IMG/VR virus record: IMGVR_UViG_3300026885_000050
Location: 1 to 13,958 of that record
Direction: 5' to 3' (one strand)
DNA: 13,958 nt
Shown here: positions 10,212 through 13,958 of the stretch, piece after piece
How positions within the stretch are numbered: position 1 is the stretch's first letter
How the letters are laid out: each line of letters opens with the position of its first letter
Notes under the pieces: generated by a model
What the model was told of the DNA's origin: nothing
The model's database searches: none
The model's input: the letters and a program-made list of their open reading frames with translations, nothing else
Program-made: the position numbers and the translations under genes

Positions 10212-10535
10212 TTAATCTTCATAATATTCTATAATAAGTCTGTTTATCGGTATATCGTTTTCAGTTACTATTTTCATTGTTTCTCTTGGCTTTAAAACTA
10301 GCAATTGGAATAATTCGTCTAGATTTTTAACTCCTAATTCTTCATATGGTATAAAATAAATATCGAAAATTCCACGGCTATCTTCATGTTGGACTAGGCA
10401 ATATTTGTCTTGATAATCTGAGATATAACATGTATATTCATTAGTAAAGATAATTTCAAAATTATTCTTATGTTTAAAAATTATAATATCTCCAACTGTA
10501 TCGGCTAATTCAAAACATAATTTATAATTTCTCAT
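10212..10535 (-). CDS. Hypothetical acidic protein, 107 aa (anti-defence candidate)
   Basis: SD GGTGAG shortly before the ATG. Last gene of the operon with the AcrIIIB1-like genes. Confidence 0.8.
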   Translation of the reverse strand: MRNYKLCFELADTVGDIIIFKHKNNFEIIFTNEYTCYISDYQDKYCLVQHEDSRGIFDIYFIPYEELGVKNLDELFQLLVLKPRETMKIVTENDIPINRLIIEYYED

Positions 10536-10548
10536 TATCTCACCACAT

Positions 10549-10776
10549 TTATCTTTTACAAATTACATATTTCCAACCGTTATCATTTACTAATACAACT
10601 TCTCTTTTATTTTCTGGACATTGATCAATTGTTGATAAGGGTAATGCATAAGCTTTATAGTGATCACAACTATTTGTAAGCGGGAAATAATTAGACGTTT
10701 TTATTAATAATTCCCTATGACATATCGGACATTTATAAACAATTAAATCTCCAAATTTCTCAACTTTTAATTCCAT
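10549..10776 (-). CDS. Small putative Zn-binding protein (CPIC...SCDH), paralog 1, 75 aa
   Basis: SD GAGGTGA (contains the track's GTG) precedes ATG 10776 (MELKVEK). Motif shared with 13076-13330 and 13526-13801. Confidence 0.8.
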   Translation of the reverse strand: MELKVEKFGDLIVYKCPICHRELLIKTSNYFPLTNSCDHYKAYALPLSTIDQCPENKREVVLVNDNGWKYVICKR

Positions 10777-10788
10777 AACTTTCACCTC

Positions 10789-11481
10789 TTATTCTTGTTT
10801 TTTAGATTTTAAATATATAATTAAGTAATGTTTTTCCGGATTTAACATCACTTTGTTTTCTTGATTATCTGGAGTTTTTATTGTTAATTCTTTAACTCCT
10901 TTAGCATACATAAAATATGCTATATTCGGCTTTGAGATTAGACCGGTTATCTCAACATTTTTCGAAAACTTTAGCTCATAATTCTCAATTGTTAGTTCAT
11001 TTTTAATATCAAAATTAAGTTCATTGGTATATTTTAGCATTGGAGTTTCGTAAATTTCTAATTGCCTATTCTTATAAATCAACGGGAATTGGTATAATTG
11101 TCCTTTCACATATTTATCTAAAATCATTATTTGTTTTTCATCATAATTAATGAGCAATCTTTTTTCTTCCAAATCATAAAATTCTATAATTCTCATAATG
11201 AGGTCTGTCAAATCATTTAGATTTTCAGCAAATCTTCCACGTGAAGATATAAAGATTTTTGGCGGTGCAGTTATATAATATATGCCCCTAGCTTCTGCTA
11301 AAGCATAATTAATTAATTCATAACAACCGCTGAACTTTCTTCCAGATTTAGAAATATATTTTGCACAATCAATATAATCGCCTTGAACTGTACTAATCTT
11401 GGTAACTTGACCTTCTATATGTTTAACCATAAAGACTTTTGGAAGGTAATTTAGATATTTTAGAATTTTTACCTCAGACAT
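10789..11481 (-). CDS. acrIIIB1: Anti-CRISPR AcrIIIB1-like protein (SIRV2 gp48 family), paralog B
   Basis: EVKILKYLNYLPKVFM, DCAKYISKSGRKFSGC, RGIYY, LLINYD..I.ILDKYVKGQLYQFPLI match motifs I recall from SIRV2 gp48 (EVK.IK.LN.LP.VF; NCA.Y.SRSG....GC; GIYFTP; YD.Y.KG..Y.FPL). Full-length similarity to 11767-12489. Confidence 0.8.
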   Translation of the reverse strand: MSEVKILKYLNYLPKVFMVKHIEGQVTKISTVQGDYIDCAKYISKSGRKFSGCYELINYALAEARGIYYITAPPKIFISSRGRFAENLNDLTDLIMRIIEFYDLEEKRLLINYDEKQIMILDKYVKGQLYQFPLIYKNRQLEIYETPMLKYTNELNFDIKNELTIENYELKFSKNVEITGLISKPNIAYFMYAKGVKELTIKTPDNQENKVMLNPEKHYLIIYLKSKKQE

Positions 11482-11487
11482 CTTAAC

Positions 11488-11757
11488 TCACTCTTCTTCT
11501 ATTTCTTCTTCTACATCTTTTATATATTCTAATGCCATCTTTATTGTATTCTCGAGATTGTCAATTATTTCATGGAAAAAGTAATCTAAAATATCGTTTT
11601 TAACAAACGTAATAAGTAGATATTGTTTTCCTTCTTTGTCAACTGTAATTTGGGCAGTCCAAATTTCCACATCTTTTGGAAAATCTGGAAATTCTTTAAC
11701 CATCTTCATGACTTCTTCCCTTACATCTTTTATTGGGTTATATTTATATTCAACCAT
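11488..11757 (-). CDS. Small acidic hypothetical protein, 89 aa (anti-defence candidate)
   Basis: SD GGTGAG overlaps the upstream TAG. ATG 11757 (MVEYKY) preferred to GTG 11766. Tail DVEEEIEEE. Sandwiched between the two AcrIIIB1-like genes. Confidence 0.8.
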   Translation of the reverse strand: MVEYKYNPIKDVREEVMKMVKEFPDFPKDVEIWTAQITVDKEGKQYLLITFVKNDILDYFFHEIIDNLENTIKMALEYIKDVEEEIEEE

Positions 11758-11766
11758 ATTTCTCAC

Positions 11767-12489
11767 CTAAGTCCTAGGTTTTGGGTGAGTTATTAAATAG
11801 TATTTGTTAACTTTTAGCATAACTGTATCTGTAGAACTTGTTGGCGATTTTAAAGTCAATGTCACTTCATTTTCCGGATGTATTAAAAATGCCACGCCGG
11901 GGTCTGAATATAAATCTCTAGTTAATGTAGGACTGGAAAACTGTATTTCGTGATGATAAATTGTTAGGCTATTGGAATGATTAAAACTAAGATTTAAATC
12001 ATTATTTATTGGCGGAACTTCATAAATTTCTAGATAATCTTGGTTGTATATTAGGTTAAATTGGTACAATTGACCTTTAATATAGTAATCGTAAATTGTT
12101 ATCGAATAATTATCATAGGAAATCAATAATTCTTTAAATCTGAGGTTTAGAAGTTCTATCTCTTTTAGTATAATGTTTTTCATATCCTCAAGACTTCTAG
12201 TAATTTTACTTCTTTTGTTAACTGAAAATATCGGTGGTGCTGGAGTATAATATATGCCTCTGGTCTGTAGAAGCTCATCTTCAAGATATTTAAAACAACC
12301 GCTGAAAGTTAATCTAGATCTTGAAATATAATTTGTGCAATTTTCGAAATATTTTGCTAATATTGAGATCTTGGTAACCTCACCATCAAGATGTTTTATC
12401 ATGAAGACTGATGGCAGATATTCTATTTGCTTTAGTATTTTTACTTCATATTTTTTAGTTTGACTTTCTTGACTTGAATTTTGAGACAT
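11767..12489 (-). CDS. acrIIIB1: Anti-CRISPR AcrIIIB1-like protein (SIRV2 gp48 family), paralog A
   Basis: EVKILKQIEYLPSVFM, NCTNYISRSRLTFSGC, GIYYTP, LLISYDNYSITIYDYYIKGQLYQF, PGVAFLIHPE and C-terminal THPKPR (recalled gp48 SHPRPR). SD GGGTGA upstream. Confidence 0.85.
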   Translation of the reverse strand: MSQNSSQESQTKKYEVKILKQIEYLPSVFMIKHLDGEVTKISILAKYFENCTNYISRSRLTFSGCFKYLEDELLQTRGIYYTPAPPIFSVNKRSKITRSLEDMKNIILKEIELLNLRFKELLISYDNYSITIYDYYIKGQLYQFNLIYNQDYLEIYEVPPINNDLNLSFNHSNSLTIYHHEIQFSSPTLTRDLYSDPGVAFLIHPENEVTLTLKSPTSSTDTVMLKVNKYYLITHPKPRT

Positions 12490-12522
12490 TTAATCTATCA
12501 CCCGCAAAATAACATATGCATT

Positions 12523-12545
12523 ATGACAAATTTAAAACTTCTTTT
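12523..12545 (-). promoter_or_regulatory. BRE-TATA-GTCAT promoter of the acr operon
   Basis: Minus strand AAAAGAAGTTTTAAATTTGTCAT, 33 nt before ATG 12489, with an SD in the leader. Confidence 0.7.
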
Positions 12546-12582
12546 ATCTTTCAAAAATTTTAACATTAATCATCATGACTTT

Positions 12583-12648
12583 GAATTTCTATGAATTTCG
12601 AATTTTTATCTACAAACTGAGAAAAATCGCTGATAGCTTTAGCTAAAT
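12583..12648. repeat. Partial copy of the intergenic cassette repeat
   Basis: GAATTTTTATCTACAAACTGAGAAAAAT...GCTAAAT versus GAATTTTTATCACAAAACTGAGAAAAAT (about 12998-13025) and GGCTAAAT (about 13493). Confidence 0.75.
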
Positions 12649-12707
12649 ATGGCCCGAAAAAAAGCAAACTAATGACTTTGAACTTGAAAACTAAAAAAAC
12701 GTTTAAC

Positions 12708-12875
12708 TTACCAACAGTCAGATAAATATTTCCTAACTGTCCTCTCTGTAACGCCTAAAAATGAGGCGATCTCTGCAATGCTATAACCTTGTCTTGCAAG
12801 CTCATGGACTATTGAAATCATATCGTCTCTCGAATTTATGTAATACTTTGTCTGACCGATTTGCACAACTTTCAT
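12708..12875 (-). CDS. HTH DNA-binding protein, SIRV1 ORF56a / SIRV2 Gp1 family, 55 aa
   Basis: MKVVQIGQTKYYINSRDDMISIVHELARQGYSIAEIASFLGVTERTVRKYLSDCW has a clear HTH and matches the recalled family pattern (YY..S.DD..S..HELA..GY....IA..LGV.ER.VR.YL..C). ATG 12875 preferred to TTG 12890. Confidence 0.85.
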   Translation of the reverse strand: MKVVQIGQTKYYINSRDDMISIVHELARQGYSIAEIASFLGVTERTVRKYLSDCW

Positions 12876-12910
12876 TTTCCTTTTCCCCAATTTACATTTT
12901 CATTTGCCCC

Positions 12911-13068
12911 TTTATAAAATTTTCTTTATGCTTTTGCCTTTACAAACTACGATTTCTTTATCGCTAAACACGTTATCTCTCAATTTCTTAACTTTCTGAA
13001 TTTTTATCACAAAACTGAGAAAAATTAAGCATAATTTAGGCAAATTAGAATTAGAAAAAATAAAAAAA
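12911..13068 (-). repeat. Intergenic cassette repeat copy A (terminator + conserved core + BRE/TATA promoter)
   Basis: Aligns end to end with 13365-13523 with a single 1-nt gap. Shared blocks TTTATAAA.TTTTCTTT, CGAT.TCTTTA.CGCTAAACA, TGAATTT.TATCACAAAACTGA.AAAAATT, GAATTAGAAAAAATAAAAAAA. Confidence 0.9.
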
Positions 13069-13075
13069 TATTAGC

Positions 13076-13330
13076 TTAAGATGGGCTTTGTTTGGGATAT
13101 AAAATATAAATGCTTGTTCCAGACCAAATCCTCAGTACAGCGTTTTTATTGAGTCTTTGTGCGTTCAATTCATAATAAAGATTACCAAACTCTCTCCACT
13201 CAAAATGCTGACATGAAGATTTTATTACGCCACCATCATATTCATTTGTCCATGCTAGCTCTGTGTTATCAATTGGACAATAATAGACTATAATTTGACC
13301 GTGATATTTCTCAATTGGACGTATTACCAT
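13076..13330 (-). CDS. Small putative Zn-binding protein (CPID...SCQH), paralog 2, 84 aa
   Basis: Own promoter (13365-13381), GGGGG SD-like tract and terminator. Motif shared with the two paralogs. Confidence 0.8.
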   Translation of the reverse strand: MVIRPIEKYHGQIIVYYCPIDNTELAWTNEYDGGVIKSSCQHFEWREFGNLYYELNAQRLNKNAVLRIWSGTSIYILYPKQSPS

Positions 13331-13364
13331 TTATTTCCCCCAATATTAATTATGTAACTTCTCA

Positions 13365-13523
13365 TTTATAAATTTTTCTTTGCATTTTTACATTTGCATT
13401 TTTCGATCTCTTTAACGCTAAACATGTAAACTCTGAATTTCTCAATTCTTTGAATTTCTATCACAAAACTGAAAAAAATTTCCCAGAATTATGGCTAAAT
13501 TGGAATTAGAAAAAATAAAAAAA
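13365..13523 (-). repeat. Intergenic cassette repeat copy B
   Basis: See copy A. The minus strand starts with terminator TTTTTTTATTTTTTCTAATT right after the 13526 stop and ends in AAAGAAAAATTTATAAA. Confidence 0.9.
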
Positions 13524-13525
13524 AC

Positions 13526-13801
13526 TTAACTTTTACGAGGAACGATAAAACTTACATACTTTTTGAACTCAAACTTCATTACCGCTTTCGCTTCATATTT
13601 TGGAATATTCTGAGAACTTTTCGGGTCACGATATACATCAATGATTTCAAAATGACTGCATGAAGATAACGGTTCAACAACATCTTTATGGAATTTTCTA
13701 AGAAAATATTCTGGATCGTTCGTAGCTAATATGTCTCCACAAATTGGACACTTGATATAGATTTTCTTGTCCACATGTTCAACTTTTAGTTGATACTTCA
13801 T
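13526..13801 (-). CDS. Small putative Zn-binding protein (CPIC...SCSH), paralog 3, 91 aa
   Basis: Intact ORF with own promoter and terminator. Motif shared with the two paralogs. Confidence 0.8.
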   Translation of the reverse strand: MKYQLKVEHVDKKIYIKCPICGDILATNDPEYFLRKFHKDVVEPLSSCSHFEIIDVYRDPKSSQNIPKYEAKAVMKFEFKKYVSFIVPRKS

Positions 13802-13808
13802 TTTAGAT

Positions 13809-13857
13809 CAACATAATTTATGTTGTTTCTTATATTTAAATTTTTCTTTATGCTTTT
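13809..13857 (-). promoter_or_regulatory. Cassette-class promoter (partial repeat copy) with palindromic operator-like site
   Basis: Minus strand AAAAGCATAAAGAAAAATTTAAATA; the block TTTTCTTTATGCTTTT is identical to copy A. Palindrome CAACATAA-T-TTATGTTG at 13809-13825. Confidence 0.7.
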
Positions 13858-13958
13858 ACGCTTTTACTTTTTGACTTTTCGATTCTCTGAATTTTTCTCT
13901 TCTAGAAAATCTTTTCCGGACAATGAATAACTTTCTATACTGCTTAACGTCGAACTTC

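What the first reader, a model, noticed from the sequence alone, without database searches (positions are those of the whole stretch)
12490..13958. Array of single-gene cassettes separated by a conserved ~158-bp terminator-core-promoter repeat
Seen: the HTH gene and two small Zn-finger-like genes are each independent units. The spacers 12911-13068 and 13365-13523 align end to end with one 1-nt gap, and partial copies occur at 12583-12648 and about 13834-13895. Each full copy carries the terminator of the previous gene, a core (CGCTAAACA, TATCACAAAACTGA, recurring GAATTT) and the BRE/TATA of the next gene. The spacers are more alike than the genes they flank. Known: rudiviral early/anti-defence genes near the genome ends share a conserved strong promoter. 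Inference: conservation extends about 140 bp beyond the promoter, so the core may be a regulator-binding platform, a small RNA, or a homology arm that lets anti-defence genes be swapped, duplicated or deleted as cassettes.
Basis: partly seen in the sequence, partly recalled or inferred. Interest (0 to 1): 0.8.

Follow-up and report, generated by a model that had tools for sequence, protein, structure and literature searches.

The report
Rudivirus anti-defence gene cassette spacers
The repeat is real: it is the terminator-plus-early-promoter spacer that separates small anti-defence genes at the ends of rod-shaped Sulfolobus viruses, half of it already published, and related viruses show that whole genes are gained, lost and swapped by recombination inside these spacers.

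Summary
Observation confirmed: 12911-13068 and 13365-13523 align at 127/159 (80%) with one gap, against 55±3% for shuffles. The flanking genes are at chance level (54%).

The window is the right end of a Usarudivirus-like rudivirus. All the genes concerned are on the minus strand: a 91-aa gene (mADG.08 family), an 84-aa gene (ADG.20 family), an Aca8 homologue, then an AcrIIIB1-like operon.

The spacer has two separable modules.
- P (~83 nt): upstream A-rich repeats, BRE/TATA, a conserved start region and an SD. It most likely corresponds to the early anti-defence regulatory sequence published in 2024; its logo could not be read here.
- D (~65 nt): core TAT..AATTTTTYTCA..TTT...ATA.TA.TTCTA, lying after the stop codon and T-runs. 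I found no description of it. It occurs in Ice-, Usa-, Hoswi- and Itarudiviruses and weakly in SIFV. It follows early genes even where no promoter follows, so it is most likely a terminator or 3'-end module.

Close relatives differ by whole cassettes, with junctions inside the spacers (window vs a 100%-identical IMG/VR contig; SIRV4 vs SIRV7). The closest analogue is the PeSL cassette of T4-type phages.

A small RNA, a small ORF and site-specific recombination are not supported.

Verdict: a known kind of element with a modest new extension. Interest is moderate.

The parts
13526..13801 (-). Cargo gene 1: 91-aa CPxC...CxH (Zn-finger-like) protein. It belongs to the family listed as predicted anti-defence gene mADG.08.
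   Evidence: ORF found. Five homologues in the 5.8-billion-protein set, among them L7G90_02800 at 77% identity. That protein is listed as mADG.08 in Supplementary Data 1 of PMC11065993. No tblastn hit in the phage collection.
13802..13958 (-). Spacer 3, cut by the contig end. It holds promoter module P (13809-13882) with TATA TTTAAATA at 13833-13840. No D module is present.
   Evidence: nhmmer hits; sequence read.
13331..13525 (-). Spacer 2, a full copy. It holds T8 and T6 runs at 13510-13524; D module 13437-13504 (T7 run, then TCAGTTTTGTGATA); a lineage-specific linker with TGTTTAGCG at about 13416-13436; P module 13338-13418 with BRE/TATA (TTTATAAA at 13365-13372); and a GGGGG SD before the ATG at 13330.
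   Evidence: It is 93% identical to L010 spacer C, with the indel junction in its first ~17 nt.
13076..13330 (-). Cargo gene 2: 84-aa protein, a distant paralogue of gene 1 that lacks the second Cys of the knuckle. It belongs to the family listed as ADG.20.
   Evidence: The V65 homologue at 32221-32484 and L7G90_02795 are listed as ADG.20. The family is not AcrID1 (hhalign probability 0.1%). L010 carries an allele only ~55% identical at nucleotide level, inside flanks that are 100% identical downstream and about 93% identical upstream.
12891..13075 (-). Spacer 1, a full copy. It holds T7 and T6 runs at 13055-13068; D module 12983-13049; a linker with TGTTTAGCG; P module 12886-12964; and TATA TTTATAAA at 12911-12918.
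12708..12875 (-). aca8 homologue: a 55-aa winged-HTH protein and putative repressor of the early promoters. The 60-aa TTG ORF that reaches 12890 is probably too long.
   Evidence: 58% identity to the short form of SIRV2 gp01, E 2e-26. phrog_7067 at E 5.8e-31. Pfam HTH_23 and Sigma70_r4_2. The literature on Aca8 and on its 55-aa form was read.
12490..12707 (-). Spacer 0. It holds T7, T4 and T7 runs, D module 12585-12651, and then a diverged promoter (TTTTAAAT at 12530-12537) for the AcrIIIB1-like operon.
11767..12489 (-). AcrIIIB1-family gene (240 aa). It is the first gene of a five-gene unit without spacers, 12489-10212, which holds a second paralogue (230 aa, 10789-11481) and a third CPxC gene (78 aa, 10549-10785).
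   Evidence: 32% identity to SIRV2 gp48, E 2e-36. phrog_6092. The two paralogues are 43% identical. ORFs listed.

Best explanation
What it is. The ~160-190-bp repeat is the standard intergenic module of the early, anti-defence gene arrays at rudivirus genome ends. It is two elements joined together.

1. The 3' module of the upstream gene. Two T-runs follow the stop codon directly. Then comes a conserved ~65-nt D element whose invariant centre is AATTTTTYTCA. This most likely acts as a multi-U-tract transcription terminator or insulator.

2. The 5' module of the downstream gene (P). It holds A-rich repeats, a purine-rich BRE, a TATA box, a conserved initially transcribed stretch and a Shine-Dalgarno site. 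I take P to be the published strong early promoter sequence that Aca8 is thought to repress. That match rests on the paper's text, because its motif logo could not be read here.

Each cargo ORF is therefore bracketed by P upstream and T-runs plus D downstream.

How it drives gene turnover. The same brackets recur 5-17 times per genome and in co-circulating relatives. Ordinary homologous recombination between them deletes, inserts, duplicates and replaces single genes. This makes the array a cassette system comparable to the PeSL cassettes of T4-type phages.

Shown here: the anatomy, the distribution, the order rules, and the natural recombinant junctions.

Inferred: termination at D, repression by Aca8, and whether exchangeability is selected for or is only a by-product.
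For: Identity of the locus.
- The window is about 80% identical to SIRV8 over its core genes.
- It carries an Aca8 homologue and an AcrIIIB1 homologue.
- Its cargo families are listed as ADG.20 and mADG.08 in PMC11065993.

The repeat is a family.
- A profile seeded on the two window spacers finds 83 D and 83 P hits at E<1e-3 in 19 rudiviral loci, and none on the reversed sequences.
- It found none in about 100 unrelated AT-rich viral loci.
- In 8 complete genomes, 110 of 110 hits lie within 5.5 kb of an end and point inward.

P appears to be the published element.
- PMC11065993 describes BRE + TTTAWATA with shared flanks upstream of aca8, acrID1, acrIIIB1 and other early SIRV2 genes.
- That study analysed only 100 bp upstream of start codons.

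D belongs to the upstream gene.
- 52 of 64 P elements are followed by a D after one gene length. Only 30 of 65 D elements abut a P (Fisher p 5e-5).
- D stands between convergent genes in SIRV2 (gp08/gp09), SSRV1 (gp02/gp03) and ARV1 (gp36/gp35).
- In SSRV1 and ARV1, neither of which is among the aca8-carrying viruses listed in PMC11065993, D lies 2-80 nt after stop codons.
- Each window spacer has four T>=4 runs in its first ~65 nt.
- Archaeal termination efficiency rises with the number of U4-tracts (PMC8716108; PMC7289017).

Cassette behaviour.
- 55 P-ORF-D units carry at least 18 unrelated protein families.
- Window spacer 2 equals L010 spacer A for its first ~17 nt and L010 spacer C for the rest. 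This removes or adds two cassettes.
- The 84-aa gene is ~55% identical between two contigs that are otherwise 100% identical for about 5 kb.
- The single SIRV7 spacer is a chimera of the two SIRV4 spacers that flank gp50.
- 16 of 35 internal homology-block ends fall in spacers, against 5.2 expected (p 1e-5).
- Three relatives carry different genes at equivalent positions.
Against: - No transcript 3'-end or TSS data were available. Termination at D is therefore inferred from sequence and position only.
- In Ice- and Usarudiviruses several T-runs precede D, so many transcripts may already end before it. That leaves the conserved non-T positions (TCA, ATA.TA.TTCTA) unexplained by a plain U-tract terminator.
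- Homology-block ends tend to fall at the edges of conserved sequence anyway, so the enrichment test is partly circular. The chimeric-junction cases are the stronger evidence, and there are only a few of them.
- Copies within one genome are only slightly more alike than copies from different lineages (D 0.63 vs 0.60; P 0.72 vs 0.66). Frequent homogenising gene conversion is therefore not evident.
- The Aca8 operator has never been mapped.
- The equation of P with the published motif is my reading of the paper's text; the logo itself was not available.
Confidence: 0.72

Rival explanations
1. D is a DNA-level binding platform (operator, roadblock or looping site) for Aca8 or another viral or host regulator. 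On this view it controls the neighbouring early promoter and is not a terminator.
For: - Positions outside the T-run are conserved (TCA, ATA.TA.TTCTA).
- Icerudivirus copies contain short palindromes such as TTAGCTAA and TATCGATA.
- A host wHTH factor, Sta1, is known to bind about 30 bp upstream of a SIRV1 core promoter (PMC1635249).
- T-runs upstream of D could already terminate transcription.
Against: - D is present in ARV1 and SSRV1, which are not among the aca8-carrying viruses listed in PMC11065993.
- D occurs between convergent genes and at the end of arrays, with no early promoter downstream.
- It is strictly co-oriented with the upstream gene (110/110 hits) and is not palindromic as a whole.
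- The palindromic sub-motifs are not kept in Usarudiviruses.
Confidence: 0.15
2. The similarity is only the residue of recent tandem duplication of a gene-plus-spacer unit. The spacers have no shared function beyond a generic promoter.
For: - The two small genes are distant paralogues and the period is regular (454 and 468 bp).
- The window lineage shares a private D-P linker, TGTTTAGCG. This points to duplication or homogenisation within the lineage.
Against: - The same two modules flank at least 18 unrelated gene families in four to five genera from Iceland, the USA and Italy.
- The aca8 gene is unrelated to the Zn-finger-like genes but has the same spacer.
- The genes are at chance-level nucleotide identity while the spacers are 80% identical.
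Confidence: 0.04
3. The core encodes a small RNA or a small protein.
For: - Short ORFs exist in both full copies on the minus strand: 12912-13043 (43 aa, TTG start) and 13366-13464 (32 aa, GTG start). Their C-terminal parts are similar.
- A local hairpin can be drawn in the window copies.
Against: - RNAalifold returns no consensus pairs on either strand for D, P or the whole element.
- Folding z-scores range from -0.67 to +1.0.
- No Rfam match at E<=1.
- No sense-strand ATG ORF of 30 aa or more in any of 40 non-redundant copies. Open stretches are mostly antisense, are not in a consistent frame, and are explained by pyrimidine-rich composition.
Confidence: 0.03
4. D is a site-specific recombination site, attC-like, recognised by a dedicated recombinase that mobilises the cassettes.
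For: - D sits at the 3' end of each cassette, as attC does.
- Cassettes are gained and lost as units.
Against: - The mapped junctions lie at different places: in the T-run before D, in the P region, and at the TATA box and the gene's 3' end. This fits general homologous recombination.
- D has no conserved dyad or structure.
- No integrase-like product appears in the rudivirus annotation tables read here.
- Cassettes carry their own promoters.
Confidence: 0.03

Closest known systems
Early anti-defence-gene (ADG) regulatory sequence / Aca8 regulon of rudiviruses (Bhoobalan-Chitty et al. 2024, Nat Commun, PMC11065993)
   Same: - Single small genes at rudivirus termini, each preceded by a shared sequence with a purine-rich BRE and a TTTAWATA-type TATA box.
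- aca8 carries the same sequence upstream.
- The window's genes fall in that paper's families: Aca8, ADG.20, mADG.08 and AcrIIIB1.
   Different: - That work analysed only 100 bp upstream of start codons.
- Its main text has no occurrence of 'terminator', 'intergenic' or 'recombination'.
- The D module lies about 100-165 nt upstream of the next ATG and is tied to the preceding gene. Neither D nor the cassette-junction evidence is described there.
PeSL (promoter-early stem-loop) composite terminator/promoter cassettes of T4-type phages (Arbiol et al. 2010, PMC2839356; Comeau et al. 2014, PMC4122927)
   Same: - Short conserved terminator-plus-early-promoter motifs lie between small, non-essential, mostly orphan genes in hyperplastic regions.
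- Insertions, deletions and replacements between close relatives have their junctions in the motifs.
- Recombination is homologous, not site-specific.
   Different: - There is no sequence relationship.
- The signals are archaeal (BRE/TATA and U-tracts) instead of a sigma-70 promoter and a stem-loop.
- The arrays sit at the two ends of a linear hairpin-ended genome and all point inward.
- Mini-circles have not been looked for.
Integron gene cassettes with attC
   Same: Arrays of single-gene units, each with a conserved element at its 3' end. Cargo is variable and adaptive.
   Different: - No integrase.
- No structured attC-like site.
- Every cassette has its own promoter.
- Junction positions vary.
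Archaeal U-tract terminators, often multiple per gene (PMC8716108, PMC7289017). From my own memory and not verified here: the Sulfolobus/SSV1 terminator consensus TTTTTYT (Reiter et al. 1988).
   Same: - Runs of four or more T directly after stop codons, several in a row.
- The invariant centre of D, TTTTTYT(CA), fits the classical Sulfolobus signal as I recall it.
   Different: About 40 further positions are conserved around the T-run. A plain U-tract terminator does not need them.

Membership tests
Rudiviral early ADG regulatory sequence (Aca8 regulon) | Strong core promoter: purine-rich BRE directly upstream of a TTTAWATA-type TATA box | tested here: met
   On the minus strand: AAAGAAAAA-TTTATAAA (13365-13380), AAGAAAAT-TTTATAAA (12911-12926) and AAAGAAAAA-TTTAAATA (13833-13848). 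P-profile hits at E 3.5e-11, 8.8e-7 and 4e-5.
Rudiviral early ADG regulatory sequence (Aca8 regulon) | Flanking sequence around the promoter shared by several single genes of the same genome | tested here: met
   Three P copies plus one diverged copy in the window, and five P copies plus one diverged copy in the sister contig L010.
Rudiviral early ADG regulatory sequence (Aca8 regulon) | aca8 present and itself preceded by the sequence | tested here: met
   Aca8 homologue at 12708-12875 (58% identity to the SIRV2 protein), with P at 12886-12964.
Rudiviral early ADG regulatory sequence (Aca8 regulon) | Transcription immediately after infection, followed by repression | not testable with these tools
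   No expression data exist for this uncultured virus. The literature evidence concerns SIRV2 only.
PeSL-type composite terminator/promoter cassettes | Terminator and early promoter fused in one conserved intergenic motif that recurs in a variable region | tested here: met
   T-runs + D + P in each spacer, recurring 5-17 times per genome near the ends. The signals are archaeal, so this is an analogy in function and not homology.
PeSL-type composite terminator/promoter cassettes | Sigma-70 early promoter plus stem-loop terminator | tested here: not met
   No hairpin terminators were found and no conserved stem. The promoter is of the BRE/TATA type.
PeSL-type composite terminator/promoter cassettes | Indels and replacements between close relatives have junctions in the motifs | tested here: met
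   Window vs L010 and SIRV4 vs SIRV7. Enrichment of 16/35 against 5.2 expected.
PeSL-type composite terminator/promoter cassettes | Excised cassette mini-circles | not testable with these tools
   This needs outward-facing PCR or long reads from infected cells.
Integron cassette / attC | Structured, imperfectly palindromic recombination site and a tyrosine recombinase | tested here: not met
   No conserved structure or dyad in D. Junctions lie at varying positions. No integrase-like product in the rudivirus annotation tables read here.
Structured non-coding RNA | Conserved secondary structure with covariation, or a match to a curated family | tested here: not met
   RNAalifold gives an open chain on both strands. 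z-scores of -0.67 to +1.0. No Rfam hit at E<=1.
Archaeal U-tract terminator | Two or more U4-tracts directly downstream of the stop codon | tested here: met
   Four T>=4 runs within about 65 nt of the stop in spacers 0, 1 and 2. The criterion comes from PMC8716108.
Archaeal U-tract terminator | Mapped transcript 3' ends at the tract | not testable with these tools
   No Term-seq or 3' RACE data were available.
AcrID1 family (for the two small CxxC-type genes) | Profile-level similarity to AcrID1 homologues | tested here: not met
   hhalign probability 0.1%. The pairwise hit is a 16-residue motif only. No NCBIfam hit.

The most novel reading that the evidence does not exclude
P and D together form a portable expression bracket shared across Ligamenvirales. 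Any ORF placed between them is expressed early, is insulated from its neighbours, and can be exchanged between co-infecting viruses by double crossover. This would be an archaeal-virus counterpart of PeSL cassettes that drives anti-defence gene turnover. In this reading D is more than a U-tract: it is a factor-dependent terminator or insulator recognised by an as yet unknown host or viral protein.
Probability: 0.3. Interest if true: 0.65.

Novelty: new variant of a known kind. Interest (0 to 1): 0.45.

Why it matters
Anti-defence genes of archaeal viruses are hard to find, because they are small orphan genes. The published method uses only the promoter side of these spacers.

A second conserved landmark on the 3' side would sharpen prediction of cassette boundaries. 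It occurs also in viruses not listed as carrying Aca8, namely ARV1 and SSRV1, with a weak signal in SIFV. It would also give a ready-made terminator part for Sulfolobus genetics.

The natural chimeric junctions give a concrete, testable mechanism for something already observed: rudivirus terminal gene content differs between isolates from the same spring while the core genome stays stable. In this mechanism the regulatory sequences double as recombination substrates, as in T4-type phages. That would be convergent evolution across domains of life.

Tried and rejected
- Structured RNA: rejected (RNAalifold, single-sequence folds, Rfam).
- Small ORF in the core: rejected.
- Bacterial-type promoter and terminator scan: uninformative for an archaeal virus.
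- AcrID1 membership of the 84-aa and 91-aa genes. A single-linkage BLAST cluster suggested it. Profile comparison rejected it.
- Strong concerted evolution of spacers within genomes: only a slight excess of within-genome identity.
- D as a host-type element. One scan of 185,579 prokaryotic genomes with a strict D-core pattern found no Sulfolobales chromosome hit. It found chance matches and SIRV3-like contaminant contigs. The pattern matches only 21 of 62 known copies, so absence is weak evidence.
- Literature. Kessler et al. 2004 on SIRV1/2 transcript mapping is not held. A search for the TTTTTYT terminator consensus found nothing relevant, so that point rests on memory. No paper was found that describes the D element or spacer-mediated cassette exchange in rudiviruses. 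The library lacks most subscription journals, so this is not proof of absence.
- The first degenerate-pattern scan of IMG/VR returned mostly unrelated AT-rich viruses. These then served as a specificity control.
Full report
**1. Observation**

Window 12911-13068 against 13365-13523 gives 127 identities in 159 columns with a single 1-nt gap. Five hundred dinucleotide-preserving shuffles give 55.3 ± 3.3% (maximum 64.6%).

The flanking genes are no more alike than chance at nucleotide level (157/290). The two small proteins are only distant paralogues (23% identity, E 8e-4).

The partial copies at about 12583-12648 and 13834-13895 are real.

All genes of the region lie on the minus strand. In the sense of transcription each spacer reads: stop codon, T-runs, conserved core, linker, BRE/TATA, short leader with a G-rich SD, ATG.

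**2. What genome this is**

The window is IMG/VR contig IMGVR_UViG_3300026885_000050. It is the right end of a rudivirus close to the Yellowstone Usarudiviruses, about 80% identical to SIRV8 over the core genes.

- The HTH gene is best read as 12708-12875 (55 aa). It is a clear Aca8 homologue: 58% identity to the short form of SIRV2 gp01, E 2e-26, and phrog_7067 at E 6e-31.
- The next gene (11767-12489) is an AcrIIIB1 homologue: 32% identity to SIRV2 gp48, E 2e-36.
- The 84-aa gene belongs to the family that Bhoobalan-Chitty et al. list as ADG.20. The 91-aa gene belongs to their mADG.08.
- Neither small gene is related to AcrID1.

**3. The repeat is a family-wide element**

I seeded an nhmmer profile on the two window spacers and iterated it. 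It finds 5-17 copies per genome in SIRV1, 2, 3, 4, 7, 8 and V65.

Split into a distal (D) and a proximal (P) profile, it gives 83 D and 83 P hits at E<1e-3 in 19 rudiviral loci. It gives none on the reversed sequences. It gave none in about 100 unrelated AT-rich viral loci that had been fetched by a loose promoter pattern.

In eight complete genomes, all 110 hits lie within 5.5 kb of an end and point inward.

The consensus in the sense of transcription is:
- D: taaTTAgCTAatttTATsnatAATTTTTyTCAnnTTtsanATAnTAaTTCTAaannTtGAaAA
- P...ATAAAAA..GAaAgATAgAaAngTAAAAanaTAGAGAAAacTTTAtATA..AGTTTtTACATAT..TGgtG, followed by the ATG.

**4. What is already known**

Bhoobalan-Chitty et al. 2024 (PMC11065993) reported a "consensus regulatory sequence" shared by aca8, acrID1, acrIIIB1 and other early SIRV2 genes. 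It holds a purine-rich BRE and a TTTAWATA box. They used it to predict anti-defence genes in 57 viruses.

Their method took 100 bp upstream of each start codon. The main text has no occurrence of 'terminator', 'intergenic' or 'recombination'. The legend of Supplementary Fig. 2C concerns motif distribution only.

P is therefore most likely the published element; I could read the paper's description but not its motif logo. D lies about 100-165 nt upstream of the next ATG and falls outside their analysis window. I found no description of it, within the limits of a library that lacks most subscription journals.

**5. D belongs to the preceding gene**

Along the arrays, 52 of 64 P elements are followed, one gene length later (178-824 nt), by a D. 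Only 30 of 65 D elements directly abut a P. Seventeen are followed by a gene with a different promoter and 12 are the last element of the array (Fisher p 5e-5).

In SIRV2, D follows gp03, gp05 and gp47, whose downstream neighbours have other promoters. It also follows gp08, whose neighbour gp09 is convergent.

PMC11065993 does not list ARV1 or SSRV1 among the aca8-carrying viruses. D is nevertheless present there, 2-80 nt after the stop codon of the last gene of a co-directional block. Twice in those genomes it lies between convergent genes. Weak D-like hits with the core TTATTTTTCTCATTTTCG occur in the SIFV anti-defence cluster.

Each window spacer has four T>=4 runs in its first ~65 nt. In archaea, transcription ends just after U-tracts, and more U4-tracts give more efficient termination (PMC8716108). 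About a third of genes have several terminator elements (PMC7289017).

The invariant centre of D, TTTTTYT(CA), also fits the classical Sulfolobus terminator consensus of Reiter et al. 1988. I cite that from memory; it could not be verified here.

I therefore read T-runs plus D as the termination or insulation module of the early transcription unit. The roughly 40 conserved positions around the T-run are not explained by this. They leave room for a bound factor.

**6. Cassette behaviour**

I took every ORF lying between a P and the next D. Fifty-five such units in eleven genomes carry at least 18 unrelated protein families. One of those clusters was later shown to be an artefactual merge.

*Window vs L010.* The sister contig L010 (IMGVR_UViG_3300026906_000071) is 100% identical to the window from about 13100 down to 7711, except for one small patch. 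Four differences stand out.
- The 84-aa gene is only about 55% identical at nucleotide level. The transitions lie at the TATA box/leader and about 25 nt before the stop codon.
- Spacer 2 is 93% identical.
- L010 has two additional cassettes, with 44-aa and 75-78-aa ORFs, each with its own D and P.
- The 91-aa gene is 83% identical.

The alignment shows that window spacer 2 equals L010 spacer A for its first ~17 nt (the T-run) and L010 spacer C thereafter.

*SIRV4 vs SIRV7.* Independently, the single SIRV7 spacer between aca8 and the AcrIIIB1-like gene is a chimera of the two SIRV4 spacers that flank the extra gene gp50. The crossover lies in the P region.

*SIRV2 vs SIRV3.* A conserved block (31530-32459 in SIRV2) ends exactly in a P at one side and a D at the other. 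The flanking cargo is unrelated.

*All comparisons.* Sixteen of 35 internal homology-block ends fall in annotated spacers, against 5.2 expected (p 1e-5). This statistic is partly circular, because block ends track conservation.

*A third relative.* Contig JAKMAA010000023.1 is binned as a Nanopusillus MAG. It has the window's order 91-8x-aca8 but a different gene after aca8.

Gene content between repeats varies, and junctions coincide with the repeats. The junctions lie at different positions within the spacer, which fits general homologous recombination and not a site-specific system.

**7. Alternatives tested**

- *Structured RNA.* No consensus secondary structure exists on either strand for D, P or the whole element. 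The window copies fold no better than shuffles (z -0.67 to +1.0). No Rfam family matches.
- *Small ORF.* No sense-strand ATG ORF of 30 aa or more exists in 40 non-redundant copies. The antisense open stretches are compositional.
- *Recent duplication.* This alone cannot explain an element shared across genera and flanking unrelated genes.
- *Homogenisation within genomes.* Copies within a genome are only slightly more alike than copies from different lineages. The 80% pair in the window and the private linker do suggest some local duplication or conversion.

**8. Comparison and verdict**

Functionally the closest described system is the PeSL of T4-type phages. These are composite terminator/early-promoter motifs between small orphan genes of hyperplastic regions. 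They mediate indels and replacements by homologous recombination (PMC2839356, PMC4122927). The rudiviral spacers do the same job with archaeal signals.

Membership in the published rudiviral early-ADG regulon is met on every feature that could be tested.

The finding is therefore a new member of a known kind, with two extensions that I could not find described: the conserved 3' module D, and direct evidence for spacer-mediated cassette exchange. This is moderately interesting to specialists, not revolutionary.

All functional statements on termination, on Aca8 repression, and on selection for exchangeability are inferences. Transcript-end mapping, reporter assays and recombination experiments in laboratory Sulfolobus-SIRV systems would settle them.

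Noticed in passing
L165/L175 (NZ_BAAAUT010000071.1), L144, L163, L172 (NZ_JBHSPB0100000-48/50/65), L131, L137, L160: AT-rich contigs (22-29% GC) that are 99-100% identical to SIRV3 sit in public 'genome' assemblies of unrelated bacteria: Planomonospora alba JCM 9373 (31,951 nt, about a whole rudivirus genome), Streptomyces gamaensis CGMCC 4.7304, Aquimarina litoralis JCM 15974, Colwellia asteriadis JCM 15608 and Paenochrobactrum glaciei JCM 15115. This looks like contamination or a spike-in.
   Followed up: partly
L165:3332-5059: The SIRV3-like contig in the P. alba assembly carries a 1,728-bp insertion of 41% GC with no rudivirus match. It interrupts the AcrID1-family gene gp37 at SIRV3 position 28068/28069. 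It looks like an IS element.
   Followed up: partly
window 10212-12489 (minus strand): Five genes follow one another without spacers. They include two AcrIIIB1-family paralogues (240 and 230 aa, 43% identical), each followed by a small gene, and a third CPxC-type gene (78 aa). This is a tandem duplication inside one transcription unit. The 90-nt direct repeat 11396-11485 / 12368-12457 is the 5' coding part of the two paralogues.
   Followed up: partly
window 12675-12774: A ~100-nt patch covers the 3' end of aca8 and the first T-runs of spacer 0. It is only 80-84% identical to L010, while everything around it is 100% identical. This looks like a short conversion tract from another lineage.
   Followed up: no
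L178 = JAKMAA010000023.1 (9,176 nt): This contig has rudiviral core genes (Cas4-like nuclease, ATPase, Rep-like) and the same 91-aa / ADG.20 / aca8 cassette order as the window. It is deposited as part of a 'Candidatus Nanopusillus sp.' MAG. It is almost certainly a mis-binned rudivirus fragment.
   Followed up: partly
L010:648-782 and L010:971-1207: The two extra cassettes of the sister contig encode orphan ORFs of 44 and 75-78 aa. They have no family match in NCBIfam. They are candidate anti-defence genes by position only.
   Followed up: no
window 13380-13415, 13848-13885; P modules generally: Upstream of the BRE, the Ice- and Usarudivirus consensus has GATAGA-type repeats about 10-11 nt apart. 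The window lineage has (G)TAAAAGC / AAAATGCAAA direct repeats there instead. This may be a lineage-specific operator that co-varies with Aca8. A similar ATAGATAG repeat is the F55 operator in SSV1 early promoters (PMC5569661).
   Followed up: no
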